NCBI GenBank assembly: GCA_963514005.1
Contig: OY740823.1
Span: 2,232,001-2,296,000 of the forward strand
DNA: 64,000 nt
Direction: 5' to 3'
Source of the DNA: Raja brachyura
Lineage: Eukaryota
The notes beneath the pieces are model-generated. The model was given only the letters and a program-made list of their open reading frames with translations. It ran no database searches and was not told the DNA's origin. Position 1 is the stretch's first letter; each line of letters starts with the position of its first letter. The translations under genes and the position numbers were made by a program. Shown here piece by piece: positions 6,073 through 55,274 of the stretch.

Positions 6073-6357
6073 TGGTGGCACAGAGGCGAACTGAGTTGCT
6101 GCCTTACAGGCCCAGAGGCCCGGGTTCGATCCTGACCACGGGTGCTGTATGTGCGGAATGTGAACGCTCTCCCCGTAACCACGTGGGTATTTACCGGCTG
6201 CTCCGGTTTCCTCCTACTCTCCAAAGACATTCAGCTGTGTGGGTTATTTGGCTGTGGCTAAAAATGAAAATTGTCCCCAGTGTTTAGGATAGTGCTTGTG
6301 TCGGGGTGATCGCTGAGTCGAAGGGCCTCTTTCCGCTCAATCTCTCTGAACTAAACT
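6073..6357 (+). mobile_element. tRNA-derived SINE in the J-C intron
   Basis: GTGGCACAG...GGGTTCGATCC (A and B boxes), same body as the other copies, (CTAAA)n-like tail. Confidence 0.8.
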
Positions 6358-6371
6358 AGAATGAATATCGA

Positions 6372-6794
6372 GGGTTACTTTACAAAAAGCTGGAGAAACT
6401 CAGCGGGTGCAGCAGCATCTAAGGAGCGAAGGAGATAGGCGACGTTTCGGGTCGAGACCCTTCTTCAGACTGGTCAGGGATCAGGGAAACACTGTCCTCG
6501 TAGGGAGGAGGAGAACTTCTTCAAAGTAGGCATACCTTGAGGAGATATCGCAGTGGAGTAGACAAACTGTTAAAGAAGGAACTGCAGATGCTGGAGAATC
6601 GAGGGTTACACAAAAAGCTGGAGAAACTCAGCGGGTGCAGCAGCATCTAAGGAGCGAAGGAGATAGGCGACGTTTCGGAAGAAGGGTCTCGACCCGAAAC
6701 GTCGCCTGTCTCCTTCGCTCCTCAGGTGCTGCTGCACCCGCTGAGTTTCTCCAGCTTTTTGTGTAACTCATCGATTCTCCAGCCTCTGCAGTTC
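6372..6794 (-). mobile_element. Non-autonomous Penelope-derived fold-back element (pLTR, short internal piece, pLTR, plus inverted pLTR)
   Basis: Two direct pLTR copies on the minus strand plus an inverted copy forming a hairpin with arms of about 100 bp (6578-6678 vs 6694-6796); flanked by CTAGAATGAATATCGA (6356-6371) and CTAGAATAAATATCGA (6795-6810). Confidence 0.85.
6441..6468 (-). ncRNA. Minimal type I hammerhead ribozyme core (PLE type)
   Basis: CUGAAGA-A-GGGU-CUCG-ACCC-GAAACGUC: intact core, helix II and palindromic ACGU helix III; helix I only about 2 bp. Confidence 0.7.
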
Positions 6795-6808
6795 CTAGAA
6801 TAAATATC

Positions 6809-6958
6809 GACCCTGATTCGATCCTAATCTCGGGCATTAGGTTTGCGGTTTACACGTTCCACTAATGACCGCGTGGGGTTTCTCTGCGTGCTGTGGTGTC
6901 CTCTAACATCCCAAATAATTGCGGGTTTGTCGGTTAATTGGCCCAATATAAATTGCCG
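6809..6958 (+). mobile_element. Partial SINE, inverted relative to the 5460-5620 part of the minus-strand copy
   Basis: Shares the unusual CTAATCTCGGG..TTTGCGGTTT variant with the 5395-5665 copy; bounded by CTAGAATAAAT at 6795-6805 and 6959-6969. Confidence 0.7.
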
Positions 6959-13827: not shown

Positions 13828-14027
13828 NNNNNNNNNNNNNNNNNNNNNNNNNNNNNNNNNNNNNNNNNNNNNNNNNNNNNNNNNNNNNNNNNNNNNNNNN
13901 NNNNNNNNNNNNNNNNNNNNNNNNNNNNNNNNNNNNNNNNNNNNNNNNNNNNNNNNNNNNNNNNNNNNNNNNNNNNNNNNNNNNNNNNNNNNNNNNNNNN
14001 NNNNNNNNNNNNNNNNNNNNNNNNNNN
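13828..14027. other. Assembly gap (200 N)
   Basis: N run. Confidence 1.
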
Positions 14028-15490
14028 CCTCTTGAAGGAGGCAGGGATACAATTCCACTACCTAGCCCTTCGCGGGTTGAGGTCTCACCAGGAGCCACTA
14101 GGAAGTGGTCTGGTGAATCAGGCAGGCCCGAGTCCACTGGCAGACCAAGAAGGGCCAGTGTCGACTCACCACCCAGAGGGACCAGGAGGAGTCACAAGGG
14201 TGGAGCCTCGCCTAGGTCACCGCTTCCCCCGCTGGGGGCAGGTCGGGACCGTACGCCGTCTGGGTCCAGATTTAGGACAGTCGGCAAGCCCGTGCGGACG
14301 TCGGGTCACCACGCTGCGGCGTCAGGTGCCGACCTCTCCCCACCCATGCCCTTTGAGGCAGCCGGGTCCAGCTCAGCGAAGAGGAGGCGCTCGAGCAGGT
14401 CCGCGCGGGAATCGCTCAGCTTCGCCGAGGCGGCTGGTAGCGACACATCATCACAGTACCGATATTACCTCGACGAGGTACGGACTGATGATCGAAGCCT
14501 CAGGAGTTCCTTCGGGCACGAGGCCTCTTACCTCCCACACCCGCCCGATGAAGGGCGCTTGGATCGTATGGAGAGGATATTGGAGCAAGTTCTACTCAAT
14601 CAGAAACAGGACACACACAGCTCCAGGGGACTCATGGATATATCCCCGTCCCCATCTATGGACAACATAAGACCAGATGAGGAGGATATCCTGGTACATG
14701 CCCCAGCAGCACCTGAGGTCCCTCAGGAAGATCTGCTGGATGTGGCAGCCAAATTCGGGTTACCCGTATCATCAGGACAACCCCTCAACATCAAACTGGC
14801 CGCAACCATAGATTATCTTACCAACCATCAATTGCAGGAGGAGGTCCTTGCGAAGGCCATGGAGAGACACAAGGCTCCAGGAACTGCAATTCACTCCACG
14901 TGCCGATTGTGAACATGCCAATCTGGGGTAATATCAGCCCGGGCATCAGAGCGCAGGAAGTGAAACTGCAGAGGATTTTAAAACTGCTTACGTCTGGGAT
15001 CACCGCTTTTGCAAAGTCGGTAGATGGGGTTGTTCTAAGCACCGAACAGGAGGATGCTCTAGCTCTGCTCTGCAATACGCAGTACGAGATCAACGCTTTC
15101 CGGAAGAGCATTATCAAACCTTCCTTGAATCCCAAATTTGCGGGACTATGCAGAGCACCTCCTACCCCCCCACCTAGACAGCTGTTCGGGGAAGACCTCC
15201 CAAAGCAGGTCAAAGAGCTCGATGACCATGCGAAAACCATAGGTCTGATGAGACCACATTTTGTGGCCAGACCTTCGGCCAAGAAGACACCTTACTTCAG
15301 GCCACGAGGTCAGACCGATAGGCCAACAAGGACCTACGTTCCGGCACCTCCTCAATATCAACAGCCTCATCAGCCCAGGCCTTTTTTAGGACTAGGCCCT
15401 CAGCGGCCAGCATGGAAGATGCGGATTCCGCACCAACCACGAAACCCAGCGCCTCCACGTCCCACCAAAAATCCCAGGGACCGCCGATAA
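14028..15490 (+). CDS. DIRS gag-like ORF1 (partial, one frameshift near 14880)
   Basis: Frames 13677..14912 and 14900..15490 join as ...HKAPG/NCNSLHVPIVNMPIWG... if one base is restored; LFGEDLPKQVKEL block. Confidence 0.7.
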
Positions 15491-17421
15491 CCATGAAGGT
15501 AAGGGGGTCTGGGTTCCATGCACTTGCATGTCTAACCTCACGAATTGGGGGCAGATTACGGGGATTTAAGGAGGCTTGGGAAACCATCACTTCAGATGAG
15601 TTTATCTTGCAAAGTATTCAGGGTTATGAAATTGAGTTTATTCATGGCCAATTGCCTCCACCCCAGCATATGCCGAATCGCAAATTTGCACTTTCCAAAA
15701 AAGAATTGGCAGAAGGCTATGCTGAAATCTTGAGTTTACAAGACAAAGGTGTGATAGAACGAACCACACATGAACCAGTTGAATTTGTGTCTAATATATT
15801 TACTAAAACTAAAAAAGACGGTGGATGCCGGGTCATTATAGATTTAACTCACTTGAATACCTTTGTAAAATACACCCATTTCAAAATGGACACATTTGAA
15901 ACAGCCAAATCTTTGATTTCGGAGGGCTGCTTCATGGCATGCATTGATTTAAAAGATGCATACTATTCAGTATCCATTCGGAAACATCATAGGAAGTTCT
16001 TGAAGTTTACCTGGATGGATCAGCTTTGGCAATACAAAGCATTGCCCAATGGGCTTACTACAGCCCCCAGACTGTTCACCAAACTACTCAAGCCAGTGTT
16101 ATCTACACTGCGGAGACAAAATCATACGGTCATGGCTTATTTGGATGACATTCTCATAATTGGGCACACTCTGGAATCCGCAGAGTTGGCGGTTTCAGCC
16201 ACAGTGGAAATTTTTCAACAAATGGGGTTTATAATCCATCCAGACAAATCAAAGTTCCTCCCCGCACAGATCATGGACTACTTGGGGTTCACAATAGACT
16301 CCAATCGCATGATCACCACCATCCCAACTAACAAAGTTGGTGATGTGTTTCAAGCATGCAAGAACCTGGTCTGCGCCAGTATACCGTCTATCAGATTAAC
16401 TGCCAGGGTAATTGGCAAAATTGTAGCAGTATTTCCAGCTGCTCAATATGGACCTTTACACTATCAGAATTTACAAAGGTCAAAAATAACAGCATTAAAA
16501 TTAAATGCTGGACATTATGATAGACCCATGCAGTTGCCGGTTAAGGCAAAACTTGAGTTACTATGGTGGATTGGCAATATCCATAACTCATTTAAACCCA
16601 TCATTGTGCCTCGTCCAAAGGTATACTTGCAAACAGATGCAAGCTCCCATGGCTGGGGAGCTACAGACAACAATAACAGTTGTGGAGGTAGATGGGATTC
16701 ACTTGAAGCTACTTTGTTGTTAGCACAAGGGATAAACTATTTGGAGATGCTAGGAGCATTCCACGGACTTAGAGCCTATTGTTCAAACATGACTAACACT
16801 CATGTCCGTCTCCAAATAGACAATACCACTGCGGTGGCTTATCTGAATCATATGGGCGGTACCAGGTCAATTTCATGCAATGAATTGGCAAACACAATTT
16901 GGCTCTGGTGTATTCAACGGAATATTTGGATCTCAGCTACCTACTTGCCAGGTGAGCTCAATACAGTGGCGGACACCAGGTCACGGAAGTTCAATGACAA
17001 CATCGAGTGGATGTTGAACCCCCAAATATTCACCAAAATTACAGCCAAATTTGGTAAACCGGATATTGACCTTTTTGCGTCACGGTTGAACCATCAGGTA
17101 CCAACATACGTATCATGGGAGCCAGATCCTGGGGCAATGGCGATGGACGCATTCTCGCTAGACTGGGGGAAATGGTTCTTCTATGCCTTTCCTCCATTCT
17201 GCCTCATCAGTCGGGTATTGCGGAAAATCCAGCTCGATGCTGCCAAGGGCATCCTCATTATACCCGACTGGCCTACGCAATCATGGTATCCGGTGGTCCT
17301 TGGAATGATAAGTCAACCATGGGTCCTCTTGGAGGGTTGCCCACAATTGGTGACGAACCCTGCCACAGGGGAACCACACCCCTGCCATAGTCATTTGAAT
17401 CTATTGGCTTGCAGGATCTGA
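15412..17421 (+). CDS. DIRS reverse transcriptase / RNase H / DNA methyltransferase-like polyprotein
   Basis: Uninterrupted 669 aa: IDLKDAYY, LPNGLTTAPRLFTK, YLDD, TDASSHGWG, INYLE, IDNTTAVAY, DIDLFAS...FYAFPPF. Confidence 0.95.
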   Translation: MEDADSAPTTKPSASTSHQKSQGPPITMKVRGSGFHALACLTSRIGGRLRGFKEAWETITSDEFILQSIQGYEIEFIHGQLPPPQHMPNRKFALSKKELAEGYAEILSLQDKGVIERTTHEPVEFVSNIFTKTKKDGGCRVIIDLTHLNTFVKYTHFKMDTFETAKSLISEGCFMACIDLKDAYYSVSIRKHHRKFLKFTWMDQLWQYKALPNGLTTAPRLFTKLLKPVLSTLRRQNHTVMAYLDDILIIGHTLESAELAVSATVEIFQQMGFIIHPDKSKFLPAQIMDYLGFTIDSNRMITTIPTNKVGDVFQACKNLVCASIPSIRLTARVIGKIVAVFPAAQYGPLHYQNLQRSKITALKLNAGHYDRPMQLPVKAKLELLWWIGNIHNSFKPIIVPRPKVYLQTDASSHGWGATDNNNSCGGRWDSLEATLLLAQGINYLEMLGAFHGLRAYCSNMTNTHVRLQIDNTTAVAYLNHMGGTRSISCNELANTIWLWCIQRNIWISATYLPGELNTVADTRSRKFNDNIEWMLNPQIFTKITAKFGKPDIDLFASRLNHQVPTYVSWEPDPGAMAMDAFSLDWGKWFFYAFPPFCLISRVLRKIQLDAAKGILIIPDWPTQSWYPVVLGMISQPWVLLEGCPQLVTNPATGEPHPCHSHLNLLACRI

Positions 17422-23767: not shown

Positions 23768-24432
23768 AAATGTGTGGCAATGAACTGCAGATGCTGGTTT
23801 AAACCAAAGATAGGCACAGAAAGTTGGAGTAACTCTGCGGGGAAGGCAGCATCTCTGGACAGAAGCATTGGGTGACTTTCTGGTTGAGACCCTTCCTCAG
23901 ACTAGTTCGGGTCAAGGGAAACGAGAGATAGAGACGATGATGTGGGGAGAAAAAGAACGATGAATAAAATAAAATGAAAACAGGCCATGAAGGAAACGGG
24001 CCACAGTTAGCTGTTTGTTGGGTGAAACCGAGAAGCTAGTGCGTCTTGGGTGGGGGAGATATAGGAAGAGAGAGAATGATGGGGCTACACGAAGATTGGG
24101 AATCGATATTGTAAACTGCCCAAGCGAAATATGAGATTCTGTTCCTCCAATTTGCGTTTAGCTTCACTCTGGCAATGGAGGAGACCTGGGAGAGAACGGT
24201 CGTGTTCACCCAACAAAGAGCTAACAAAGGCCTGTTTCCTTTATCGTCGTTACTTTTTTGCATATATTTCATTAATTGTATTTTATCTCTCGACATCATT
24301 CCCTTTGTCTCTCGTTTTCCTTACCCTTAACCAGTCTGAAGGAGGGTCTGGACCCGAAACGTCCCCATTCCTTCTCTGCAGAGATACTGCCTATTCCGCT
24401 GAGTTACTCCAGCTTGTGTGTCTATCTTGGGA
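23768..24432 (-). mobile_element. Penelope-derived fold-back element (pLTR and GIY-YIG C-terminal remnant, plus inverted pLTR)
   Basis: Arms at about 23805-24030 and 24202-24430 are inverted; degenerate hammerhead cores at about 23873-23900 (-) and 24336-24363 (+); 8-bp TSD TACAGGTA at 23760-23767 and 24433-24440 inside an older CR1. Confidence 0.8.
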
Positions 24433-25369
24433 TACAGGTACACTGTTCCCTGAAAGTGTTACGCTAAGACAGGGTGGTTTAAAAAGGCCTTTTGTGCATT
24501 CGCCTTGGTGAGGCTGCATTTGGAGTATTGTGTGCACAAGTGATCATGTTGCTATAGAATGGTATGAAAATCATGAAGGAAACAGATGGACTAGAATCAC
24601 TGTGCTTTTTACAAGAGGGTTGTGATCAAAACCAAATGTTTGATGTGAGATGGGCAAGATTTAGAAATAACTTGAGGGTGAAATTTTGAACTCAATGAGT
24701 GGTAGGTATATGGAGCGAGCCGCCAGAGGAGATGGTGAAGGCAGATATAACAACAACATTAATAAGATACTTGGGCAGGTACATCGTCAGGGAATGTTCA
24801 TAGGGATATGGCCCAAACGTAGTTAGCATGGACGAGTTTTGCGTGGTTCCCAGTGGTATGACTATGACACTATGACGGAGCATCTATGGGCCTCTGGAGG
24901 AGAGAGTGTCAGGATCTACAATCTCAGAATGAAGGAAGTTCGTCGGTTTAATTCCCCATTCTCTCCGATCTTTAGCTTTCCCAGCTAAAGAAAACAGACT
25001 CCCTGCGTTCACTTTGTGGTCCAACCAATGTGTTGTCATTCAACATCATTGCCTCTTATCGTCCTCAGCTTCAACGAATTAGGCGGCCCCCTTTCAATCT
25101 ATTCGCATGGGACACCCCTCCTATTACAAGAACGCAGGCCCGGCTACGCCGCCCAATACTGTTGACTGCGGAAGGAGAATGAAGACTAAAGAATTGTACA
25201 TATGAAACAAGACCCCAGCCCTCTTGCTACCTGACCTCCTTCTCCAATAGCTTGAAGATAACCTAAATTAGCATCACCTGTGTATGAGGTTTATTTCGTT
25301 CATGCGTCAGCACAGGATAACTACGTATGTGAACAGTCAATGAAAACCGTCACCCATATGCTGTATGCT

Positions 25370-26200
25370 ACATGCTATATTGTACATAAATGTGAGGTTA
25401 TCCACTTTGGTGGCAAAAATAGGAAAACAGACTATTATCTAAATGGATGCCGATTAGGAAAAGGGGAGATGCAGCGCGACCTGGGTGTCATGGTACATCA
25501 GTCATTGAAAGTAGGCATGCAGGTGCAGCAGGCAGTGAAGAAAGCGAATGGTATGTTAGCTTTCATAGCAAAAGGATTTGAGTATAGAAGCAGGGAGGTT
25601 CGACTTCAGTTGTATAGGGTCTTGGTGAGACCACACCTGGAGTATTGCGTACAGTTCTGGTCTCCAAATCTGAGGAAGGACATTATTGCCATAGAGGGAG
25701 TGCAGAGAAGGTTCACCAGACTGATACCTGGGATGTCAGGACTGTCTTATGAACAAAGACTGCATAGACTCGGTTTATACTCTCTAGAATTTAGGAGATT
25801 GAGAGGGGATCTTATAGAAACTTACAAAAGTCTTAAGGGGTTGGACAGGCTAGATGCAGGAAGATTGTTCCCGATGTTGGGGAGGTCCAGGACAAGGGGT
25901 CACAGCTTAAGGATGAGGGGGAAATCCTTTAGGACCGAGATGAGAAGGACTTTTTTCACACAGAGAGTGGTGGGTCTCTGGAACCCTCTGCCACAGAGGG
26001 TAGTTGAGGCCAGTTCATTGGCTATATTTAAGAAGAAGTTAGATGTGGCCCTTGTGGCTAAGGGGATCAGAGGGTATGGAGAGAAGGCAGGTACGGGATA
26101 CTGAGTTGCATGATCAGCCATGATCATATTGAATGGCGGTGCAGGCTCGAAGGGCCGAATAGCCTACTCCTGCACCTAATTTCTATGTTTCTATGTTTCT
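25370..26200 (+). mobile_element. CR1 3' fragment, open frame
   Basis: KCEVIHFG...GEKAGTGY* and (TTTCTATG)n tail; its 3' end is the donor for the 27709-28850 capture. Confidence 0.92.
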
Positions 26201-27271
26201 ACATGCTATATACACATATAGAGCTACGCAACATGGAATCAGACCTCTCTTGTCCATGTTGACCAGTTTGGCAAATTAGGCTCAAATCATTTACCAGAAT
26301 TCGACATGTGGCCTTTTAATTCCTTCCGATCCAAATATCTATCCAAATGCTTTTTAAGCAACCTAATTGTATCCGTCTCTGCTCGTTCATCTGGCAGCCT
26401 ATTCCAGATATGCAAAATGAACCTTTTCTATACATGCACGGCCAAATATTTTATAAATGTTGTTATCGTACATAATACAACTATTTCCTCTGGCAGCTCA
26501 TTTATACCAGTCTATGTGAATACGCTGCCTCTTAGATTCCTCTAAAATGTTTCCCGTCGCACCTTTAACACTTTCTTATAGTTTCTAATTAGCCCTACCC
26601 TGGGTAAATTAATGTGCATTCACACTATCTATTCTCCTCATGATTTTTTACACCTTTTGTAAATCAGCCCTCAGCCAGCTGTCCTAAAAAACATAGTCGT
26701 TGCATGACAAATCTCTTTCTCTATAGCACAGGCAGTCAAGGTCTGGCAACACCCTAGAAAATCTTCTCTGCAAACTTACCATCGTAACGGCATATTTTCT
26801 ATCGGCGTGTTACTGTGTTAATAGGCCTATTGTTCTGGGGTGATCTTATAGAGGTGTACAAAATCATGAGCGGATAGATGCACAGAGTCTTTTGATCAGA
26901 GTAGGGAAATCGAGGACCAGAGGACATAGGTTCGAGGTGAAGGAGAAAATATTTAATTGGAATTCATGGGGTAACATGAATTCATGGGGTAACAAAGGGA
27001 GTTGGGTGTATGAAAGAAGCTGCAAGAGGAGGCAGTTGATGTTGGGCCAATCCCATCGTTTGAACAAATAGATAGACAGGTACATGGATGGGACAGGTTT
27101 GCAAGGATATGGACCATTCGCAGGCAGGTGGGACTAGTGTGGCTGGGACATGTTGGCCGTGGTGGACAAGTTGGGCCGAAGGCCCTGTTTCCACACTGTC
27201 ACTCTATGACACTATGACACTAGGGGAAGGGGGAGGAATCCTTTGCAGTGACAGAGACCCTTCAACAACTT

Positions 27272-27439
27272 GTGTAGGGAGCAATTGAGGATGCAGGAGT
27301 AAACCAAAGATAGACATAAAAATGCTGGAGTCAGGGAGCAATTCTGGACAAAAGGAATAGGGGACGTTTCGGGTCGTGCCCCTTCTTCAGAAGAGATGCT
27401 GCCGGACCCGCTGAGCTACTCGAGCATTTTGTGTCTGTC
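27272..27439 (-). mobile_element. Miniature Penelope fold-back element
   Basis: pLTR reverse complement ending in CTTCTTCAG (core 27363-27390) joined to an inverted pLTR tail; imperfect 13-bp TSD CCTTCAACAACTT / CCCTCAACATCTT. Confidence 0.7.
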
Positions 27440-27812
27440 CCCTCAACATCTTCACCGACACAGACGAACCGATCCGCCACTGGCTGCCCTGTACCTTGCA
27501 TTGCACGAATAAGTGCAGCTCATCAATCAGTCCATTGGTTGAAAGCGTTTTTGGATCTGTCTGAAATGGCGATGGGCGGTATAAAAATGTAACGATTCAC
27601 CTCTGCGCTACGAACCTGCTGTTTTGCGTCACCTCCCAAATGTTCATTGAGTGCTCTCTATTGCCACCACGTGGGCAATGGTGTAACACGATATCTGGCC
27701 ACATTACGTTGTTTTAAAGAAGGAACTGCAGATGCTGGAGAATCGAGGGTTACACAAAAAGCTGGAGAAACTCAGCGGGTGCAGCAGCATCTAAGGAGTG
27801 AAGGAGATAGGC

Positions 27813-27840
27813 GACGTTTCGGGTCGAGACCCTTCTTCAG
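27813..27840 (-). ncRNA. Minimal hammerhead core
   Basis: CUGAAGAAGGGUCUCGACCCGAAACGUC intact; the 5' strand of helix I is replaced by captured DNA. Confidence 0.65.
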
Positions 27841-28102
27841 GGAAGGCAGGTACGGGATACTGAGTTGCATGATCAGCCATGATCATATTGAATGGCGGTG
27901 CAGGCTCGAAGGGCCGAATAGCCTACTCCTGCACCTAATTTCTATGTTTCTATGTTTCTACATGCTATATACACATATAGAGCTACGCAACATGGAATCA
28001 GACCTCTCTTGTCCATGTTGACCAGTTTGGCAAATTAGGTTACACAAAAAGCTGGAGAAACTCAGCGGGTGCAGCAGCATCTAAGGAGTGAAGGAGATAG
28101 GC

Positions 28103-28130
28103 GACGTTTCGGGTCGAGACCCTTCTTCAG
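28103..28130 (-). ncRNA. Minimal hammerhead core (tandem copy, 290 nt from the previous one)
   Basis: Identical core sequence. Confidence 0.65.
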
Positions 28131-28756
28131 AGAAGGCAGGTACGGGATACTGAGTTGCATGATCAGCCATGATCATATTGAATGGCGGTGCAGGCTCGAA
28201 GGGCCGAATAGCCTACTCCTGCACCTAATTTCTATGTTTCTATGTTTCTACATGCTATATACACATATAGAGCTACGCAACATGGAATCAGACCTCTCTT
28301 GTCCATGTTGACCAGTTTGGCAAATTAGGCTCAAATCATTTACCAGAATTCGACATGTGGCCTTTTAATTCCTTCCGATCCAAATATCTATCCAAATGCT
28401 TTTTAAGCAACCTAATTGTATCCGTCTCTGCTCGTTCATCTGGCAGCCTATTCCAGATATGCAAAATGAACCTTTTCTATACATGCACGCCCAAATATTT
28501 TATAAATGTTGTTATCGTACATAACACAACTATTTCCTCTGGCAGCTCATTTATACCCGTCTATGTGAATACGCTGCCTCTTAGATTCCTCTAAAATGTT
28601 TCCCGTCGCACCTTTAACACTTTCTTATAGTTTCTAATTAGCCCTACCCTGGGTAAATTAATGTGCATTCACACTATCTATTCTCCTCATGATTTTTTAC
28701 CCCTTTTGTAAATCAGCCCTCAGCCAGCTGTCCTAAAAAACATAGTCGTTGCATGA

Positions 28757-28784
28757 CTGAAGAAGGGTCTCGACCCGAAACGTC
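28757..28784 (+). ncRNA. Minimal hammerhead core (inverted arm)
   Basis: Identical core sequence on the plus strand. Confidence 0.65.
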
Positions 28785-29215
28785 GCCTATCTCCTTCACT
28801 CCTTAGATGCTGCTGCACCCGCTGAGTTTCTCCAGCTTTTTGTGTAACCCTCTGGCCACATTACGCTTGGTTCCTGCAGCCAGGACATGAGAACATGGAA
28901 TAAATGAAAACACTGCCTTCATAAACTCGTCTGCAAAATTGTTTGTTAGGAAGATGTGCAAGTCGCTCTTGATTTGAATGATGGTGCATAGAATAAAACA
29001 GTGTCAGCCTGTGTTGGTCATTTTTACTTCTCTTCTGAGTTCAGGTAAATACTTATTACCAATGTATTTAAAAATAAAAATACCCAAAGTGCTGGAGTAA
29101 TTCAGCGGGTCAGAATGCTGGAGAACATGGACAGGCAACGTTTCGGGTTGGGATCCTTGGGTTGCTTTCTAACATCTCAAATTATCGTGTTACCTCCAAA
29201 GTCAAGGTACCTATA

Positions 29216-30832
29216 CAGTGGCTTGCAAACGTTTTCATACCCCTTGAACCTTTCCACATTTTGTCACGTTACAACCACAAACGTAAATGTATTTTATTGG
29301 GATTTTATGTGATAGACCAACACAAAGTGGTGCATAATTGTGAAGTGGAAGGAAAATTATCCATGGTTTCCAAATTTTATTACAAATACAAAACTGAAAA
29401 GTGTGGCGTGCAAAAGTATTCAGCCCCCCTCAGTCACTACTTTGTAGAACCACCTTTCGCTGCTTTTGCAGCTGCAAGTCTTTTGTGATATGTCTGTACC
29501 AGCTTTGCACATCTAGAGACAGAAATGTTTGCCCATTCTTCTTTGCAAAATAGCTCAAGCTCAGTCAGATTGGATGGATAGCGTCTGTGAACAACAATTC
29601 TCAAGTCATGCCAGAGATTCTCAATTGGATTTAGGTCTGGACTTTGACTGGGCCATTCTAACACATGAATATGCTTTGATCTAAACCATTCAATTGTAGC
29701 TCTGGCTATATGTTTTGGGTCGTTGTCCTTCTGGAAGGTGAACCTCCGCCCCAGTCTCAAGTCCTTTGCAGACTCTAACAGGGTTTCTTCCAAGATTGCC
29801 CTGTATTTGGCTCCATCCATCTTCCCATCAACTCTGACCAGCTTCACTGTCCTTGCTGAAGAAAATCATCCCCACAGCACGATGCTGTCACCACCATGTT
29901 TCACAGTGGGGATGGTGTGTTCAGGGTGATGTGCAGTGTTAGTTTTCCGCCACACATAGCGTTTTGCATTTAGGCCAAACACGTCAATTTTGGTCTCATC
30001 AGACCAGAGCACCTTCCTCCACATGTTTGCTGTGTCCCCCACATGGCTTGTGGCAAACTGCAAACGGGACTTCTTATGGCTTTGTTTCAACAATGGCTTT
30101 CTTCTTGCCACTCTTCCATAAAGGCCCGATTTGTGGAGTGCACGACTAATAGTTGTCCTGTGGACAGATTCTCCCACCTGAGCTGTGGATCTCTGCAGCT
30201 CCTCCAGAGTTACCATGGGCCTCTTGGCTGCTTCTCTGATCAATGCTCTCCTTGCCCGCCCTGTCAGTTTAGGTGGACGGCCATGTCTTGGTAGGTTTGC
30301 AGTTGTGCCATACTCTTTTCATTTTCGGATGATGGATTGAACAGTGCTCCGTGAGATGTTCAAAGCTTGGGATATTTTTTTATAACCTCAGCCTAATTTA
30401 AACTTCTCCACAACTTTATCCCTGACCTGTCTGATGTGTTCCTTGGGCTTCATGATGCTGTTTGTTCACTAATGTTCTCTAACAAACCTCTGAGGCCTTC
30501 GCAGAACAGCTGTATTTATACTGAGATTAGATTATACACAAGTGGACTCTATTTACTAACTAGGTGACTTCTGAAGGCAATGGGTTGCACTGGATTTATT
30601 TAGGGGTATCAGAGTAAAGGGGGCTGAATACTTTTCCACGCCACTCTTTTCAGTTTTTTATTTGTAAAAAAAATTGACAAACCATGTATCATTTTCCTTC
30701 CACTTCACAATTCAGCGCCACTTTGTGTTGGTCTATCACATACAATCCCAGCAAAATACATTCACGTTTGTGGTTGTAACGTGACAAAATATGGAAAAGT
30801 TCAAGGGGTGTGAAAACTTTTGCAAGCCACTG
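29216..30832 (-). mobile_element. Full-length Tc1/mariner DNA transposon (IR/DR type, Passport-like)
   Basis: CAGTGGCTTGCAAA termini, TIRs of about 215 bp, TA TSD at 29214-29215 and 30833-30834, 1617 bp long. Confidence 0.95.
29437..30453 (-). pseudogene. Tc1 DD34E transposase with three in-frame stops and no frameshift
   Basis: MKPKEHIRQVRDKVVEKF..GRPPKL..WSDETK..FQKDNDPKH..SPDLNPIENLW..KGGSTK; 339 codons in one frame. Confidence 0.92.
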
Positions 30833-31599
30833 TAGTTGTTTGGAAGGTCCATAATTCATGAACATTTGAGGAATCATTTTTCCAATTGTTTGTGCTTTTA
30901 GTTAATTGTTTTTCTTTCTTTCCAGTTTTTCAAATATGTGCTGTAGGAGGGAATTATATGCTTTACCCGCAGCCTGTATCTGACTTTGAACAGATATGCA
31001 CAGATACAAAATTTAACAGCTCCTCGGTCAGGGGTGTATCTGATGAACCAGTCGGTTTATTAGAGATGCACATCAGCAAATAGTGTGAGCAAGCCCAATC
31101 TGCTTCAATAATCTATAGTAATAGTACAGTTTCATACCCTCATGACACAATTGTTACTCGTAGTTGAAATAAACCATCATTAATCAATGTCTCTGGAACG
31201 TTTTATCTTTGTCTTTCCACAAAGTTAACTTTAACCTTTATCTTCCTGGTGTTTCCAAACTCCAAGAAGGAGCTGTTGAGCTGGAGACAGCAGCTGGATT
31301 AAATCCACAGCCTGGGACCACCAGGTCTCGTGGCTTTGATCACCCACTGAAACAATGGTGGGCTGACAACAGAATGTCAGACCGAAGCAACAAATTTACG
31401 GGCCTCTGATGAGGCTCGTAACAAACCACTAATTCAGTATTCTTTTCGGAGGCCTGATATACAGGCTCGAGCAAGCCAAGATTGGCGGATGCCTGTTTAT
31501 GATACATTGAGGCCTGGGAAGAACAACAAGCCAAGGGACTCGTGACAAAACGTATCCAGACCACCACCTTTTTCAGAGGTCTGTTTACCGTTCCTCCGA

Positions 31600-36588: not shown

Positions 36589-38909
36589 CAATTAAAAAAG
36601 GCTTTAAAATTGGATAATATATCACTCTGTCTCCCCATTGTTATCAATCCCTTATTCAAACCTTCCATACTGGATAAAGGTTTCACACAGTGGAAAAATA
36701 CGGAATTAAAAAGATGGGATATCTTTATAAGAAAGGTATTTTTCTTTTATTTCAGGAGTTACAACAGATTTATGGACTGCACTCAAATATTTGTTTCAGA
36801 TATCTACAACTTAGAGATTATGTTAAATTCAATACACAAGATTATAGGAGTAGGGAACCAGAAATCTTTGATGAATGTTAGAATAAACATCCTAATACAG
36901 GAAAATTAACAACTTATACCCTTTTAGATAGGGAGGTCCCAGCGACGGAATCATATAACTTGGTTAAGAAGGTTCAATCTTTGGGTGTTAATGGCTGAGT
37001 AGCAAGATGGATTCAACAGTGGCTGAATGGGAGATGTCAAAGAGTAATGGTAGATGGCTGTTTGTCAGGTTGGAAGCCGGTGACCAGCGGGGTGACTCGG
37101 GGATCTGTGTTGGGTCCACTGTTGTTTGTCATGTACATCAATGATCGGGATGATGGGGTGGAAAATTGGATAAGTAAGTATGCAGATGATGCTAAGATAG
37201 GTGGTGTTGTGGATAATGAAGTAGATTTTCAAAGTCTACAGAGAAATTTGGGCCATTTGTAAAAGTGGGCTGAAAGATGGCAGATGTAGTTTAATGCTGA
37301 TAAGTGTGAACTGCTACATCTTGGCAGGACAAATCAAAATAGGACGTACATGGTAAATGGTAGGGAATTGAGGAATGCTGTGTAACAGAGGGATCTAGGC
37401 ATAACTGTGCATAGTTCCCTGAAGGTCGAATCGCATGTAGGTAAAGAAAGCTTTTGGTGTGCTGGCCTTTATAAATCAGAGCATTGAATATAGGAGTAGG
37501 GAAGTACTGTTAAAATTGTACAAGGCATTGGTGAGACCAATTCTGGAGTATGGTGTAAGATTTTGGTCGCCTAATTATAGGAAGGATGTCAACAAAATAG
37601 AGAGAGTACAGAGGAGATTTACTAGAATGTTGCCTGCGTTCCAGTGACTAAGTTACAGAGAAAGGTTGAACAAGTTAAGTCTTTATTCTTTGGAGCGCCG
37701 AAGATTAAGGGGGGACTTGATTGAGGTCTTTAAAATGAAGAAAGGGATAGACGGAGTTGACGTGGATAAGCTTTTCCCATTGAGGGTAGGGAAGATTCAA
37801 ACAAGAGGGCATGACATGAGAATTAAGGGACAGAAGTTTAGGGGTAACAAGAGGGGGAACTTCTTTACTCAGAGAGTGGTGGCTGTGTGGAATGATCTTC
37901 CAGCAGAAGTGGTGGAGACAGGATCGATTTTAACATTTAAAAGTAAAGTGGATAGGTATATGGACGGGAAGGGAATGGAGGGGTATGGTCTGAGTTCAGG
38001 TAGATGGGACTAGGGGAAAATAAATGGTCGGCACGGACTGGAAGGTCCGAGAGGGCCTGTTTCCGTGCTGTAATTGTTATATGGTTATATCTTATATGGG
38101 AAAATGAATTAGGTCAACCTATAGCGAAAGATATTTGGGACAAAAGTCTACAACAAACACATCAATGCTCGTTAAATTCCAGACATGTTTTAATACAATT
38201 TAAAGTATTACACAGATTACATTACTCTAAAGTAAAATTAAATAGAATTTTCCCACATATCTCTCATATCTGTGATAAATGTCAGCATCTAAAGGCTAAC
38301 TTAACATACTTTTGCAAATTGTATAAAAATAAAAAAATTCTGGATTGATATTTTAGAATAATTTCTGAAGTTGTTAATACTAAACTGGATCCCGACTCAA
38401 AACTAATAATATTTGGAATATCAGAACAAAGTCTAACACTCACAACAAGCCAAAGAAACGTTCTAGACCACAGTATAATAACTGGGAAGAAATGAATATT
38501 AAAATTTTGGAAATATCTTATAACCCCCACAATTAATATGTGGATTATGGAAATGTCGGAGACCCTACAACTGGTAAGAATCAGATTTGTCTTAGCGGAC
38601 AAACAAGAACTTTTTCTTAGAATATGGTCTTCATTCATCGATTATTTGAAAGGGTAGATTGGTTCGGCACGGGAACCTAACTGAAACCTAACTGAAACTT
38701 GAACTCCGGATCAGATGAAAAGTTATACTTTTTTTTAGCTTGACATTTATGGGTTTTTTTCTCTTTGTTTCTTAGTTTCTAGCTATATTTAAAAAAATTA
38801 GAAGCAGAATGAATCCTCAATTGATAATATTAATAATGTATGATTGATACACATGAAATGTTTTCACCATAATATATGTTTGCTTCTAATAAAAATATAT
38901 TTAAAAAAA
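36589..38909 (+). mobile_element. 5'-truncated L1-clade LINE nested in CR1
   Basis: AT-rich ORF2 C-terminus (NPLFKP, YLQLRDY, IQFKVLHRLHY, CDKC), AATAAA and poly(A); 13-bp TSD AGAAAGCAATTGA (36576-36588) / AGAAAGCATTTGA (38910-38922). Confidence 0.88.
36960..38090 (+). mobile_element. CR1 (GTTATATG-tail subfamily) nested in the L1
   Basis: KYADD RT motif through the 3' tail; the L1 frame resumes at ..IWENELGQ. Confidence 0.88.
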
Positions 38910-39667
38910 AGAAAGCATTTGATAAGGTCCCACATAGGAGATTAGTGGGCAAAATTAGGGCACATAGTATTGGCGGTAGAGTGCTGACACGGATAGAGAA
39001 GTGGTGGGCAGACAGGAAACAAAGAGTAGGGATTAACGGGTCCCTTTCAGAATGGCAGGCAGTGACTAGTGGGGTACCGCAAGGATCGGTGCTGGGACCG
39101 CAGCTATTTACAATATACATCAATGATTTGGATGAAGGGATTCAAAGTAACATTAGGAAATTTGCAGATGACACAAAGCTGGGTGGCAGTGTGAACTGTG
39201 AGGAGGATGCTATGAGAATGCAGGGTGACTTGGACAGATTGGGTGAGTGGGCAGATGCATGGCAGATGAAGTTTAATGCGAATAAATGTGAGGTTATCCA
39301 CTTTGGTAGCAAAAACAAGCAGGCAGATTACTATCTAAATGGCGTTAAGTTGGGAAAAGGGGAAGTACAACGGGATCTGGGGGTCCTTGTATGTCAGGCA
39401 GTGAAGAAAGCGAATGGCATGTTGGCCTTTATAACAAGAGGAATCGAATATAGGAGCAAAGAGGTCCTTCTGCATTTGAGGAAGGACATTCTTGCTATTG
39501 AGGGAGTGCAGCGTAGGTTTACAAGGTTAATTCCCGGAATGGTGGGTCTGTCATATGCTGAGAGAATGGAGCAGCTGGGCTGGTACACTTTAGAAGGATG
39601 AGAGGGGATCTCATTGAAACATATTAGATTTTTAAGGGCTTGGACACACTAGAGGCAGGAAACATGT

Positions 39668-42511
39668 GACTTGGGAAGCGCGGAGGCTACCGAGCTAGGC
39701 TGAGATCAAACCCGCACCAGCCAGCTCTGCCCAGCATTTTCGCGCAAATGCCCGGTCCCTGGTGAGTAAAACCGACGAACTTCGGCTGCGGATCACCACA
39801 CACAGACGGATCGCCGACTGCAACGCCATGGTCTTCACCGAAACATAGCTCACCGACAACATTCCGGACAAAGCCATCGAGCTAGAGGGTCGCACTGTCT
39901 TCAGGGCCGACGGATCAGCGGAGGACTCCGGTAAGACCAAGGGCGGCGGACTGTGCATCTGTGTGAACAACTCATGGTGCACAGACGCTGTCAGGATTGG
40001 TAGTCACTGCTCTGCTGACCTGAAATACCTGATGTTAAAGTGCAGGCCCTTCTGTCTGCCCAGGGAATTTACATCGACTGTCATCACTGCAGTCTATGTA
40101 CCCCCGGACGCTAATGCCAGGCTTGCAATGGAAGAGCTGCAAGCTGCTATCAGCAAACAACTAACTGCTCACCCACAGGGGGCTTTTATTGTTGCGGGTG
40201 ATTTTAACCACCCCAATCTTAAAACTGTGCTCCCCAGATTCCACCAACATGTCTCCTGCCCAACCAGAGGTAACAATATTCTGGACCTAGTATATACCAA
40301 TATTACTGAAGCATACAAAGTCCTCCCTCTCCCCCACCTGGGACAGTCTGACCACCTCTCTCTGTCCCTGCTCCCCAAATACACACCTCTGATCAGACGT
40401 GTGAAACCTACCGTGAGGACAGTGAAGGTCTGGCCTGAGGGGGCTGTCTCTATTTTACAGGAACAGTTTCAGCAAACAGACTGGAGTGTGTTTGCCACCC
40501 AGGCCACCTTTAACTCCTATGTGGACATCAACTCATACACCTCAACCGTTCTGGACTATATAAAATTCTGCACTGATAACGTCACTACCCGTAAAGAGAT
40601 AAAGACCTTCCCAAACCAGAAGCCGTGGATGAGCAGGGAGGTCAGACTCCTGCTGAAGGCTCGAGACGCCGCTTTTAAATCTGGCGACGCTGATGGATAC
40701 AGCTCATCCAGGGCCAATCTGAAATAGGGAATTAGGAATGCTAAACTCAATCACAAACGGCGGATTGAGGAGCATTTCCGAAACAACTCTGACCCCAGGC
40801 GCATGTGGCAAGGAATCAAATCCATTGCCGATTACCATAAAGTCAACAACCCCCCCCAGACAACGCCCCCCTTCCTGATGAGGGTAACCGTTTCTATGCT
40901 CACTTTGACCGGGCCAACAAAACTCCAGCCATCAAAGTTGCTCCACCCCTGAATGAACAACCCCTCAGTCTCTCCATCTCTGCTGTACAAGACGCACTGA
41001 GCACGGTGAATGAGCACAAAGCTGCCGGCCCCGATGGCATCGCAGGTCGGTTGCTCAGGGCATGTGCTGGACAACTATCCCTGGTCCTCACTGACATTTT
41101 CAATCTGTCACTGGCCCAGGGTGTCATACCCACTTGCCTCAAAACATCTACCATTGTGCCAGTGCCCAAACAATCAGCGACAGGGAGTCTCAACGACTTG
41201 CGGCCAGTGGCACTCACCCCTGTCATCGCCAAGTGCTTTGAGCGGCTGATCTTGGCTCACCTCAAAGCCAGCCTCCCCCCCCCCCCCCCCCCCCCACACT
41301 GGACCCCCACCAATTTGCCTACCGGACAAACAGGTCTACAGAGGACGCGATATCGGCGGCCCTAAACTCTTCCCTGACCCACCTGGACAGCAACAACACC
41401 TACATCAGGCTGCTGTTCATTGACTTCAGATCCGCCTTTAACATTGTCATACCCGCTAGCTTGATCACCAAACTCAGCGGTCTTGGCATCTCCACCTCCC
41501 TCTGCAATTCGACACTGGATTTCCTCACTAACAGACCACAGTCTGTTAGGGTCAACAACCTCACCTCCTCCACTATAACACTGAACACCGGCGTGCCACA
41601 GGGCTGTGTGCTCAGCCCTCTCCTCTACTTCCTCTTCACCCATGACTGTATCCCTAAGTATGGCTCCAACGCCATCATAAAATTTGCCGACGACACCACG
41701 GTGGTGGGACTGATCAGCGACAACGACGAGTCAGCTTACAGGGAGGAGGTCCAGCACCTGACTACCTGGTGTGCCAACAATAAGCTCGTCCTCAACTCCC
41801 AGAAGACGAAGGAAATCATTGTTGACTTTAGGAAGAACAGAGGGGGCAGACACACCCCTATCCATATAAACGGGACTGAGGTGGAGCGGGTATCCAACTA
41901 CAAATTCCTCGGGATACACATCTCGGAGGATCTGTCCTGGTCCCTCAACACCTCAAAGCTGATCAAAAAGGCGCAGCAGCGCCTTTACTTCCTGAGGAGG
42001 CTCAAAAAAGCCCACCTGTCCCCCCAGATCCTGACCAATATTTACCGCTGTACCATCGAAAGCATCCTGACCACCTGCTTTACGGTATGGTACAGCAGTT
42101 GCACCGTGGCAGACAGGAAGGCACTACAACGGGTGGTGAAAACCGCCCAGTACATCATCGGTGCCCCACTTCCTGCTATGGATGCCCTCTACCGAAAACG
42201 GTGTCTGAAACGGGCCAGGAAGATCATCAAGACCCCTCACACCCTAACCATGGACTGTTTGCCCTCCTACCATCAGGGAGGCGGTACAGGAGCCTCAGGT
42301 CCCGCACTAGTAGGATGAGGAACAGCTTCTACAATAACACCATCACACTGCTGAACTCGGAGTCCCGCCGATAGATTTCTCCAGTCTCTTCGTCCACATT
42401 GTCTGCATTCTGTATTTATTTTCTATATTGCTACCACTTCTAACTGATTAACTGCATTTTTTGTACCTATACTTGTATCTGTGCAATGACATTAAAGTTG
42501 AATTGTATTGA
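39668..42511 (+). mobile_element. Rex1/Babar-clade LINE nested in CR1
   Basis: Endonuclease (KCRPFCLPREFT, AGDFNH, SDH), RT ([22 protein letters not shown]), [14 protein letters not shown]; (TTGAA)-type tail; few disablements. Confidence 0.88.
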
Positions 42512-45583: not shown

Positions 45584-45729
45584 NNNNNNNNNNNNNNNNN
45601 NNNNNNNNNNNNNNNNNNNNNNNNNNNNNNNNNNNNNNNNNNNNNNNNNNNNNNNNNNNNNNNNNNNNNNNNNNNNNNNNNNNNNNNNNNNNNNNNNNNN
45701 NNNNNNNNNNNNNNNNNNNNNNNNNNNNN
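45584..45729. other. Assembly gap (146 N)
   Basis: N run. Confidence 1.
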
Positions 45730-54136: not shown

Positions 54137-55274
54137 GTAAGAACTTTAGCAAACGAACGTCTACAGTTATGCATTTTGAGATATTTTGATTCGTTCCCTT
54201 CCTGGTGATGTACCTATTGGAACTTTGGCAATGACAGTAAGGACGACATCGGCAGTAAGTGATGTGGAAATGCTGGAGAAACTCAGCAGGTGAGGCGGCA
54301 TCTATGGAGCGCACAGGGCTTGAACCTGGTGAGACGCAGGAGGAGCCCGGCCGGGAGTCACCCCACAGAGCCCAGTCCCTCCATGCACTCGAGTCTCCCA
54401 ACCCCTGCAGAGTAGTTTTTAAGATGGCTGATCCGTGGTCGGTTGCTGCTGGGACGCAAGTCGGGGCCTGATCAACCCCGGCTGGGTCGCCTGGGCGAGG
54501 GTGTCTGATGTTGTGAGACCCGAAACATCCGATGACTCCAGGTCACATCACTGAGGATGCGTCCCAGCGCATCTAGAAGATGAATATTTTTCACATAGGC
54601 GACGTTTCGGGGCGAGACCATTCTTCAGACTCGGGAATATGCTTTGTGTCGTATTGTTTTGAGTCTGTTGAAAATAAACAAACTATTGAGACAGACGCTG
54701 GGAGGAGGACGTGCGATAGGGTTTCGGGATTGCGGTGGGAGATGCCTACCCCTATTGGTCGATCATTGAGATACGGCTGGGAATTAAATCTGCGGCGGTC
54801 GAAGGCGCTCGCAACTTGGCTGCTGCCCGACTAAAACGACGTTTTTTTAATAGCCCCGCGCACTTTGATATAATTTTAATTCACGTTGCCTCGTGTTGCA
54901 AGAAACCTGACATAAAAGCCGTCTGGTTTAAAGGTAAAACACGAAACACTACCTCTCTGTGTATCAGTCAGCGCAGCAGACATCTCCTGCTCCGAACAAT
55001 CAGACATGGGATGCTCAGGTTTTCATGTCCAAGTATATATATACACTCAATTCCAGGTGATTGAAGAGATTTCGACGCACGGTTGTTGCCAGCCGAGTTT
55101 TGTCACGCATAAAAAAACAGAAGACAGTTGAATGGATCAACTAACTTATAATGTCTCAGTGCTGCATGTGGCGGCCCACATTGATAGGGCGGTTAATGAT
55201 ATCGGCACGTTGGCCATCAACCTGTGAACTGCACGTAGAGGTTGCGACGTTATCGGACAATTGTGTACAATTGA

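What the first reader, a model, noticed from the sequence alone, without database searches (positions are those of the whole stretch)
27694..28865. Hammerhead-armed Penelope fold-back element that captured 627 bp of neighbouring DNA
Seen: a 1142-bp insert (27709-28850) sits between perfect 15-bp direct repeats TCTGGCCACATTACG. Its ends are inverted arms of a Penelope pseudo-LTR, about 93 bp of perfect inverted repeat. Between the arms is a copy of local sequence 26082-26708 at 28131-28757 (offset 2049; I see about 4 substitutions). The copy spans a CR1 3' end plus its flank, so it came from this locus and not from the CR1 family at large. Both junctions fall exactly on the first C of the hammerhead core (...CTTCTTCAG|cargo|CTGAAGAAG...), with 1-2 nt of microhomology. 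The diverged paralogous site near 1875 shows the empty state. Established: PLE pLTRs carry minimal type I hammerheads, and PLEs often have inverted 5' pLTR pieces. Inference: a PLE-driven capture and duplication system, loosely analogous to Pack-MULEs, in which the RT template-switches onto nearby sequence at the ribozyme boundary. I do not know of this structure being described.
Basis: partly seen in the sequence, partly recalled or inferred. Interest (0 to 1): 0.88.

Follow-up and report, generated by a model that had tools for sequence, protein, structure and literature searches.

The report
Penelope fold-back insertion with copied local DNA
A real, lineage-specific 1.1-kb insertion made of three short hammerhead-bearing Penelope-type retroelement pieces joined by two copies (198 and 627 bp) of DNA lying 1-1.6 kb upstream: most likely a one-off multi-jump accident of Penelope reverse transcription, not a dedicated gene-capture system.

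Summary
The insert 27709-28850 has perfect 15-bp target-site duplications, and reads from a ~1.4%-diverged relative contain the exact empty site. It holds three Penelope-type (PLE) 3' pieces, not two. All three stop at the first C of the CUGA box. Their outer ends fall on two points about 36-40 nt apart, which matches the published two start sites ("tail") of PLE reverse transcription and its extension of both DNA strands. Between the pieces lie two copies of local DNA, both entered at donor nucleotide 26082/3: 198 bp and 627 bp.

Best reading (about 0.6): one aberrant retrotransposition in which the PLE enzyme ran off a short RNA, jumped twice onto a nearby template, re-started once at its own start site, and joined the opposite-strand cDNA.

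The CUGA boundary is a family-wide 5' end. Cargo-less fold-backs turning there are common in reads, so it is not specific to capture. I found no second cargo-bearing copy and no sign of re-mobilisation, so "Pack-MULE-like system" is unsupported.

The source individual's own reads were not available. Other scan notes already flagged the 290-bp repeat and the boundary rule in this window.

The parts
27694..27708 (.). Left copy of the 15-nt target-site duplication
   Evidence: Perfect direct repeat with 28851-28865. The empty-site contig in organism F joins 27693 directly to 28851.
27709..27744 (-). 36-nt 'tail': the extreme 3' end of the PLE-type unit, present at this end of the insert only
   Evidence: The same sequence follows the arm in the tandem/fold-back element at 6570-6605 and 6771-6796. 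It corresponds to the 30-40-nt PLE tail lying between two RT start sites (PMC11167929; PMC8557442).
27745..27840 (-). Arm A1. The sense strand is the minus strand; it runs from the C of CUGAAGA outward. The min-hammerhead core is at 27813-27840.
   Evidence: 100% inverted repeat with 28757-28852. BLAST to the family unit gives positions 102-233 together with the tail.
27841..28039 (+). Partial cargo: a copy of donor 26082/3-26280. The last GG is shared with arm A2.
   Evidence: Identical to the donor except for the junction base 27841.
28038..28130 (-). Arm A2: a second complete 'start-site-1 to CUGA' unit of 93 nt. Core at 28103-28130.
   Evidence: 100% identical to A1 and complementary to the right arm. 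Its outer end lies within 1-5 nt of the right arm's outer end.
28131..28756 (+). Full cargo: a copy of donor 26082-26707(8), with 4 substitutions
   Evidence: Low-copy word depth over 28292-28707.
28757..28850 (+). Right arm, sense on the plus strand, without tail. Core at 28757-28784.
28851..28865 (.). Right copy of the target-site duplication
26080..26708 (+). Donor of the cargo: the last ~120 nt of a CR1-like LINE 3' end plus ~500 nt of low-copy flank. It ends 1001 bp upstream of the insertion point.
   Evidence: An organism F contig spans the donor's right boundary (26628-26863), so the donor sits in place there.

Best explanation
This is a single aberrant insertion of a short, non-autonomous Penelope-type (retrozyme-like) RNA.

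Proposed sequence of events:
1. The PLE endonuclease nicked both strands 15 bp apart, and both 3' ends primed reverse transcription.
2. The top strand started at the outer start site (giving tail + A1). The bottom strand started at the inner start site (giving the right arm).
3. Both cDNAs ran to the same 5' point of the RNA, the C of the CUGA box.
4. Instead of being joined directly, as in the many cargo-less fold-backs of this family, the top-strand cDNA jumped onto a nearby minus-strand template whose 3' end lay at 26082/3.
5. It copied 198 nt and was then recaptured as a primer at the enzyme's inner start site, making A2.
6. It ran off at the CUGA box again, jumped to the same entry point, copied all 627 nt, and finally joined the 3' end of the bottom-strand cDNA.

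Shown: the anatomy, the TSD, the empty site, the two classes of outer ends, the common inner end, the repeated entry point, and the microhomologies. Inferred: that the PLE enzyme, rather than a host polymerase, did the copying; the order of steps; and the nature of the acceptor (RNA or nicked DNA).

The product is probably dead on arrival. It is a local 627-bp duplication, not a mobile cargo carrier.
For: - A perfect 15-nt TSD, and an exact empty site in organism F. One 548-nt contig maps 27407-27693 and then 28851 onward, at the same depth as neighbouring single-copy contigs, in 3 runs from 2 samples.
- Outer ends fall into two classes about 36-40 nt apart. A1 ends at arm position 132, A2 at 91-93, the right arm at 94-96, and the independent element at 6372 at 94-99. 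This matches the two adjacent internal RT start sites, the one-sided tail, and the cleavage and extension of both strands shown in vitro for an Anolis PLE (PMC11167929).
- All three arms end at the same inner nucleotide.
- A2 is a complete start-site-to-run-off unit. A random later duplication breakpoint would hit that site about 0.5% of the time (my estimate: about 6 nt out of 1142).
- The only mismatch in the 290-bp repeat sits on the junction base. That is expected for two separate jumps with different added nucleotides.
- The cargo was entered twice at the same donor nucleotide, with 1-3 nt of microhomology at every junction.
- Donor and copy differ at 4 sites. Organism F carries the copy allele at 3 of them and the donor allele at 1, so changes accumulated on both copies after a real duplication.
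Against: - Only one instance was seen.
- The source individual's reads were not among the runs offered, so the interior (perfect 290-bp repeat, 96-nt inverted repeat) is not confirmed independently of the assembly.
- Nothing shows what the acceptor was, or why it had ends at 26082/3 and 26708.
- Host repair polymerases also make microhomology-mediated templated insertions.
- Template jumping has not been demonstrated for a PLE enzyme in the papers read.
- The reason for the stop at the CUGA box is unknown. In the element at 6372-6796 one cDNA read straight through that point.
Confidence: 0.6

Rival explanations
1. Two-step origin. An ordinary cargo-less, nearly perfect palindromic fold-back inserted first. 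Later the palindrome broke at its centre (hairpin or cruciform cleavage). Host microhomology-mediated, synthesis-dependent repair then filled the gap with DNA copied from 1-1.6 kb upstream, with one extra template switch.
For: - Cargo-less fold-backs that turn at or within about 10 nt of the CUGA box are common in reads. Many contigs per run join 28131 to 28755-28767.
- Both cargo junctions lie exactly at the centre of symmetry, with 1-3 nt of microhomology.
- Centre-break revision of palindromes is an established process. This rests on my own knowledge: one search listed papers that use the term, but I did not read any of them.
Against: - A2 begins within a few nucleotides of the enzyme's inner start site and ends at the run-off point. 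It looks like a fresh RT product, not a random repair copy.
- Neither arm lost a single nucleotide at the supposed break.
- No intermediate was seen: organism F has the fully empty site.
Confidence: 0.2
2. This is a recurrent PLE-driven capture system, analogous to Pack-MULEs, in which inverted hammerhead arms pick up neighbouring DNA at the ribozyme boundary and can move it.
For: Cargo sits between inverted arms inside a TSD. The family is abundant and recently active.
Against: - No second cargo-bearing copy in 64 kb. The two other fold-backs have no cargo.
- No such note elsewhere in the scan of this genome.
- No junction-bearing contigs in the four runs laid. These runs lack the insert, so this test is weak.
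- The right arm stops at the RT start site. In the Anolis PLE the RNA needs about 55 nt beyond that site to be used (PMC11167929), so re-mobilisation looks unlikely.
- The boundary is a general family 5' end, not specific to capture.
Confidence: 0.07
3. Assembly artefact. All or part of the interior (the 290-bp repeat, or the cargo itself) was created by mis-assembly of a repeat-rich region.
For: PLE tandem/inverted insertions are known to trouble assemblies (PMC8557442). No read from the source individual was available. Organism F and probably organism G lack the insert.
Against: - Mis-assembly does not create a perfect 15-nt TSD whose removal reproduces exactly the empty site seen in another lineage.
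- The cargo differs from the donor at 4 sites in a phylogenetically sensible pattern.
- The nearest assembly gaps are more than 13 kb away.
Confidence: 0.05

Closest known systems
Complex tandem/inverted insertions of Penelope-like elements, with a one-sided 30-40-nt tail (Evgen'ev & Arkhipova; Craig et al. 2021, PMC8557442; Frangieh et al. 2024, PMC11167929)
   Same: An inverted 5'-truncated copy next to a direct copy, a tail at one end only, a TSD, a min-hammerhead core in the repeat, and two outer-end classes that match two RT start sites.
   Different: 627 + 198 bp of non-element DNA copied from nearby sits between the pieces. I found no description of this in the PLE papers searched.
L1 twin priming and template-jump chimeras of non-LTR retrotransposons, such as U6-L1 chimeras and R2 end-to-end template jumping (own knowledge; PMC8857657 was listed but not read)
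   Same: Both target 3' ends prime cDNA, giving an inversion. The polymerase leaves the 5' end of one template and enters the 3' end of another with 0-3 nt of homology.
   Different: A different enzyme class (telomerase-related RT with a GIY-YIG nuclease). The acceptor is a local sequence used twice. Re-initiation occurs at an internal start site.
Pack-MULEs / Helitron gene capture
   Same: Host DNA lies between terminal inverted sequences inside a TSD.
   Different: Those are recurrent, and the composites transpose again. Here there is one copy, no evidence of movement, and an RNA-based element.
Metazoan non-LTR retrozymes (Cervera & de la Pena 2020, PMC7229834; Li et al. 2026 preprint, 10.64898/2026.07.22.740005)
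   Same: A short non-coding unit of about 230 nt carrying a type-I min-hammerhead core, derived from a PLE pLTR and found in tandem (6372-6678). The 290-bp repeat places two cores in direct orientation.
   Different: The arms here lack the strand 5' of the CUGA box, so helix I cannot form. No circular RNA or cleavage was tested.
Templated filler insertions at double-strand-break repair junctions, and centre-break palindrome revision
   Same: Microhomology at every junction, a local template in cis, and junctions at the palindrome centre.
   Different: The internal arm copy has the boundaries of a reverse-transcription product.

Membership tests
Penelope-like element insertion (non-autonomous pLTR-derived unit) | Inverted and/or partial tandem 5'-truncated copies flanked by a target-site duplication | tested here: met
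   Inverted arms inside a perfect 15-nt TSD. A second element at 6372-6796 has a tandem plus inverted layout and a 14-nt TSD with 1 mismatch.
Penelope-like element insertion (non-autonomous pLTR-derived unit) | A 30-40-nt tail at one end only, reflecting two adjacent RT start sites | tested here: met
   A 36-nt tail at 27709-27744, absent at 28850. Outer ends cluster at arm positions 91-99 and 120-132 across six young arms. Criterion taken from PMC11167929 and PMC8557442.
Penelope-like element insertion (non-autonomous pLTR-derived unit) | RT plus GIY-YIG endonuclease ORF | tested here: not met
   The insert has no ORF of that kind. Among window ORFs of 200 aa or more, only LINE-type RVT_1 / Exo_endo_phos_2 hits appear, and none is GIY-YIG. 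The element must therefore be non-autonomous; its autonomous partner was not identified.
Minimal type-I hammerhead of PLEs (Cervera & de la Pena 2014) | [quoted passage not shown] | tested here: met
   Read directly from the arm sequence against the traits listed in PMC4209133.
Minimal type-I hammerhead of PLEs (Cervera & de la Pena 2014) | Helix I, and recognition by a curated hammerhead model or demonstrated cleavage | tested here: not met
   No Rfam hammerhead hit at gathering score or at E<=10 on the arms or on the full unit. The arms are cut at C3, so the 5' strand of helix I is gone. Even the full unit offers only about 2 pairs. MFE folds are no better than shuffles. Cleavage was not tested.
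Pack-MULE-like capture system | Several independent cargo-bearing copies and/or transposed copies of the composite | tested here: inconclusive
   None in the 64-kb window. None in the scan notes. The whole genome could not be searched with these tools.
Metazoan non-LTR retrozyme | Tandem units of about 170-400 nt, each with an active hammerhead, giving circular RNA | not testable with these tools
   Two cores lie 290 nt apart on the minus strand, but helix I is absent. No RNA data were examined.

The most novel reading that the evidence does not exclude
Penelope-type reverse transcription complexes, after running off a short RNA at the CUGA box, repeatedly jump onto nearby nucleic acids and re-initiate at their own start site. 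If so, PLE insertions would be a recurrent source of kilobase-scale local duplications, and possibly of occasional mobile chimeras, in PLE-rich vertebrate genomes. This locus would be the first dissected example.
Probability: 0.12. Interest if true: 0.75.

Novelty: new variant of a known kind. Interest (0 to 1): 0.5.

Why it matters
How PLEs integrate is poorly known. The only biochemical study I found (2024) showed extension of both strands and two internal start sites in vitro. This locus is a natural product that displays both features. It also suggests template jumping and re-initiation in vivo, which would explain how PLE fold-backs arise. If more cases exist, it would show that PLEs can duplicate neighbouring host DNA. 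It also gives a clean presence/absence marker between closely related lineages. As a single event it has no evident function.

Tried and rejected
- Rfam at gathering score on the whole window, and at E<=10 on 27250-29250 and 6300-6850: no hammerhead family matched. The only hits were generic hairpin matches to miRNA models, below threshold, on the 6.6-kb fold-back.
- RNA folding of the full unit and of the right arm: no better than shuffles, z about 0.
- Ribozyme cleavage as the cause of the junction: rejected. The predicted cut (after GUC) lies 28 nt 3' of the junction.
- An initiator-like motif (CCAGTCT) just upstream of the CUGA box as a transcription start: possible, but the junctions sit 2-3 nt downstream of its A. 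Unresolved.
- The paralogue at 1876-2105 as an empty site: homology starts only at the TSD, so it says little.
- The older inverted pair at 23779-24415: its arms extend well upstream of the CUGA box, so it is not a cargo case.
- Pfam on the ORF feeding into the donor (25280-26101): no hit. Only weak similarity (E 4e-6) to a LINE ORF2 tail elsewhere in the window. 'CR1-like' therefore rests on my recognition of the C-terminal motif and the repeated 3' tail.
- No shared sequence motif was seen at the four inferred nick or end positions.
- Literature searches for PLE template switching or capture found nothing describing this structure.

Full report
**What is there**

The sequence shows a 1142-bp insert (27709-28850) between perfect 15-nt direct repeats at 27694-27708 and 28851-28865. 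The assembly gaps in the window are far away, at 13828-14027 and 45584-45729.

Read on the plus strand, the insert has six parts:
1. A 36-nt extension, 27709-27744.
2. Arm A1, 27745-27840, ending in CTTCTTCAG.
3. A 198-nt copy of donor 26082/3-26280.
4. Arm A2, 28038-28130, identical to A1 over 93 nt.
5. A 627-nt copy of donor 26082-26708, with four substitutions.
6. A right arm, 28757-28850, the perfect reverse complement of A1 over 94 nt (96 nt if two TSD bases are counted).

Parts 2+3 and part 4 plus the start of part 5 form a 290-bp direct repeat. Its only mismatch is the junction base itself (27841 G vs 28131 A). Another scan note on the same stretch did flag the 290-bp repeat.

**It is a real insertion, absent from a close relative**

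Logan contigs of four public runs were laid on 25900-29000. In three runs from two samples of 'organism F', one 548-nt contig maps to 27407-27693 and continues directly at 28851. It therefore carries one copy of the 15-mer and no insert.

- Its depth (9-16) equals that of neighbouring single-copy contigs.
- It differs from the window at 6 of 437 positions.
- In the more diverged 'organism G', two contigs end and begin so that they would overlap by exactly 30 nt (k-1) if the site were empty. That site is probably empty too.

No run from the assembled individual was on offer. The arms are repeats with about 1e6 word depth, which breaks short contigs. The interior is therefore not confirmed independently of the assembly.

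**The cargo came from this locus**

- The donor's first ~120 nt belong to a very high-copy LINE 3' end. The rest is low-copy.
- A 274-codon ORF runs continuously into the donor. Pfam does not name it. I recognise its C-terminal motif as CR1-like from my own knowledge.
- An organism F contig crosses the donor's right edge (26628-26863), so the donor sits in place there.
- At the four donor/copy differences, organism F carries the copy's base at three sites (28490, 28525, 28558) and the donor's base at one (26652). Three changes therefore fell on the donor and one on the copy after the duplication. That is what a genuine duplication of roughly 0.6% divergence should look like, and not what a mis-assembly would produce.

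**What the arms are**

The arms belong to an abundant family with at least 15 fragments in the window. A second young element at 6372-6796 has a 14-nt TSD with one mismatch. It shows the whole unit of about 230 nt: about 100 nt upstream, then CUGAAGA..., then the 132-nt part seen here, arranged as a partial tandem plus an inverted piece.

The core meets the four traits published for PLE minimal hammerheads (PMC4209133):
- an extra nucleotide after A9;
- a G10.1-C11.1 pair;
- a long helix II;
- a palindromic ACGU at 15.1-16.1.

However, no Rfam hammerhead model matches even at E<=10, and folding is no better than shuffles. In the arms the 5' strand of helix I is missing because they begin at C3. 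'Hammerhead-armed' is therefore correct as a motif statement and unproven as a statement about activity.

No GIY-YIG/RT ORF lies in the window, so the unit is a non-autonomous, retrozyme-like PLE derivative (compare 10.64898/2026.07.22.740005).

**The ends tell the mechanism**

Frangieh et al. (PMC11167929) showed three things for an Anolis PLE:
- the enzyme cleaves and extends both target strands;
- reverse transcription starts at two adjacent internal sites without homology to the target;
- the 30-40-nt 'tail' seen at one end of genomic copies is the stretch between those sites.

At this locus the outer ends fall into exactly two classes:
- A1 at arm position 132 (with tail);
- A2 at 91-93, the right arm at 94-96, and the independent copy at 6372 at 94-99.

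The inner ends of all three arms are the same nucleotide, the C of CUGA. Each arm thus looks like a complete cDNA from a start site to a run-off point.

A2 in particular is hard to explain as a later random tandem duplication:
- A breakpoint would land within a few nucleotides of the start site with a probability of about 0.5% (my estimate).
- The sole mismatch of the repeat would have to fall on the junction base by chance.

I therefore read the 290-bp repeat as a second round of the same reaction. The 3' end of the 198-nt cargo copy was used as a primer at the inner start site.

Both cargo copies begin at the same donor nucleotide, with junctions CAG+G+GAAGG and CAG+A+GAAGG. This argues for an acceptor with a defined 3' end at 26082/3 on the minus strand. 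The 627-nt copy may have ended at the acceptor's 5' end (26708), where synthesis passed to the 3' end of the opposite-strand cDNA. Microhomology is 1-3 nt at each junction. Whether the acceptor was an RNA or a nicked DNA strand cannot be told from sequence.

**The CUGA boundary is a family rule, not a capture rule**

In the window, short copies or fold-back arms begin 0-4 nt from the C of CUGA at 8910, 27391, 6675 and the three arms here. The shorter or diverged fragments at 54631 and 57137 also end near there. Older or longer copies run through it (4189, 6569, 23922, 24314).

In the reads, many contigs per run join the antisense arm at 28131 to the sense arm at 28755-28767. These are cargo-less fold-backs that turn at the same place.

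The predicted ribozyme cut is 28 nt further 3', so cleavage does not create this end. Its cause is open: an RNA 5' end, an RT stop, or inheritance from fold-back masters. Another scan note stated the same rule for this window. My counts support it only in part.

**Rival explanations**

- Two-step origin. A cargo-less palindrome inserts, later breaks at its centre, and is repaired with templated filler. This fits the central junctions and the microhomologies. It does not explain A2's boundaries or the intact arm ends, and no intermediate allele was seen. I give it about 0.2.
- A recurrent capture system. It has no support beyond this one locus. The right arm ends at the start site, whereas the Anolis enzyme needs about 55 nt beyond it. 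About 0.07.
- Mis-assembly. It is unlikely given the TSD, the matching empty site and the allele pattern. About 0.05.

**Verdict**

This is a new variant of a known kind. It is a complex PLE insertion in which reverse transcription appears to have jumped twice onto nearby sequence, duplicating 627 bp. It is a useful natural record of how PLE fold-backs form. It is not evidence for a cargo-carrying transposon system. None of the papers I searched describes such a structure.

Noticed in passing
window 6358-6810: A second young element of the same subfamily (6372-6796). It consists of a partial tandem of the ~230-nt unit plus an inverted piece, with a 14-nt TSD (6358-6371 / 6797-6810, 1 mismatch) and a tail at one end only. 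One cDNA read through the CUGA box; the opposite arm starts 0-3 nt from it. It gives sub-threshold Rfam hairpin hits to miRNA models.
   Followed up: partly
window 27306-27434: An older, diverged copy of the family. A 41-nt inverted piece is joined 3 nt from the CUGA box. It lies between the donor and the insertion site.
   Followed up: partly
window 23779-24415: An old inverted pair of longer pLTR copies, with arms of about 163 nt at 74% plus 45 nt at 82%. The arms extend well upstream of the CUGA box, so the boundary is not universal.
   Followed up: partly
window 26201 / 27719 (reads): In all four runs, 10-17 contigs join the LINE 3' microsatellite-like tail (ending at 26201) to the PLE tail (from 27719). 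The PLE-type unit may often insert into, or next to, such LINE tails.
   Followed up: no
window 29214-29428 and 30619-30834: A 216-bp inverted repeat at 90.7% identity just downstream of the insertion. Nature unknown.
   Followed up: no
window 26441, 26476, 26509, 26652 vs 28490, 28525, 28558, 28701: At all four donor/copy differences the copy has C. Outgroup contigs show C is ancestral at three of them, so the donor changed there, while at 26652/28701 the copy changed.
   Followed up: yes
window 15412-17418, 38876-42315, 55261-56499: LINE-type reverse transcriptase ORFs (RVT_1, Exo_endo_phos_2). No GIY-YIG Penelope ORF appears among ORFs of 200 aa or more.
   Followed up: partly
window 54268-54631: A different hammerhead-like family with CUGAAGA and CUGAUGU-type cores in opposite orientation within about 110 nt.
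   Followed up: no
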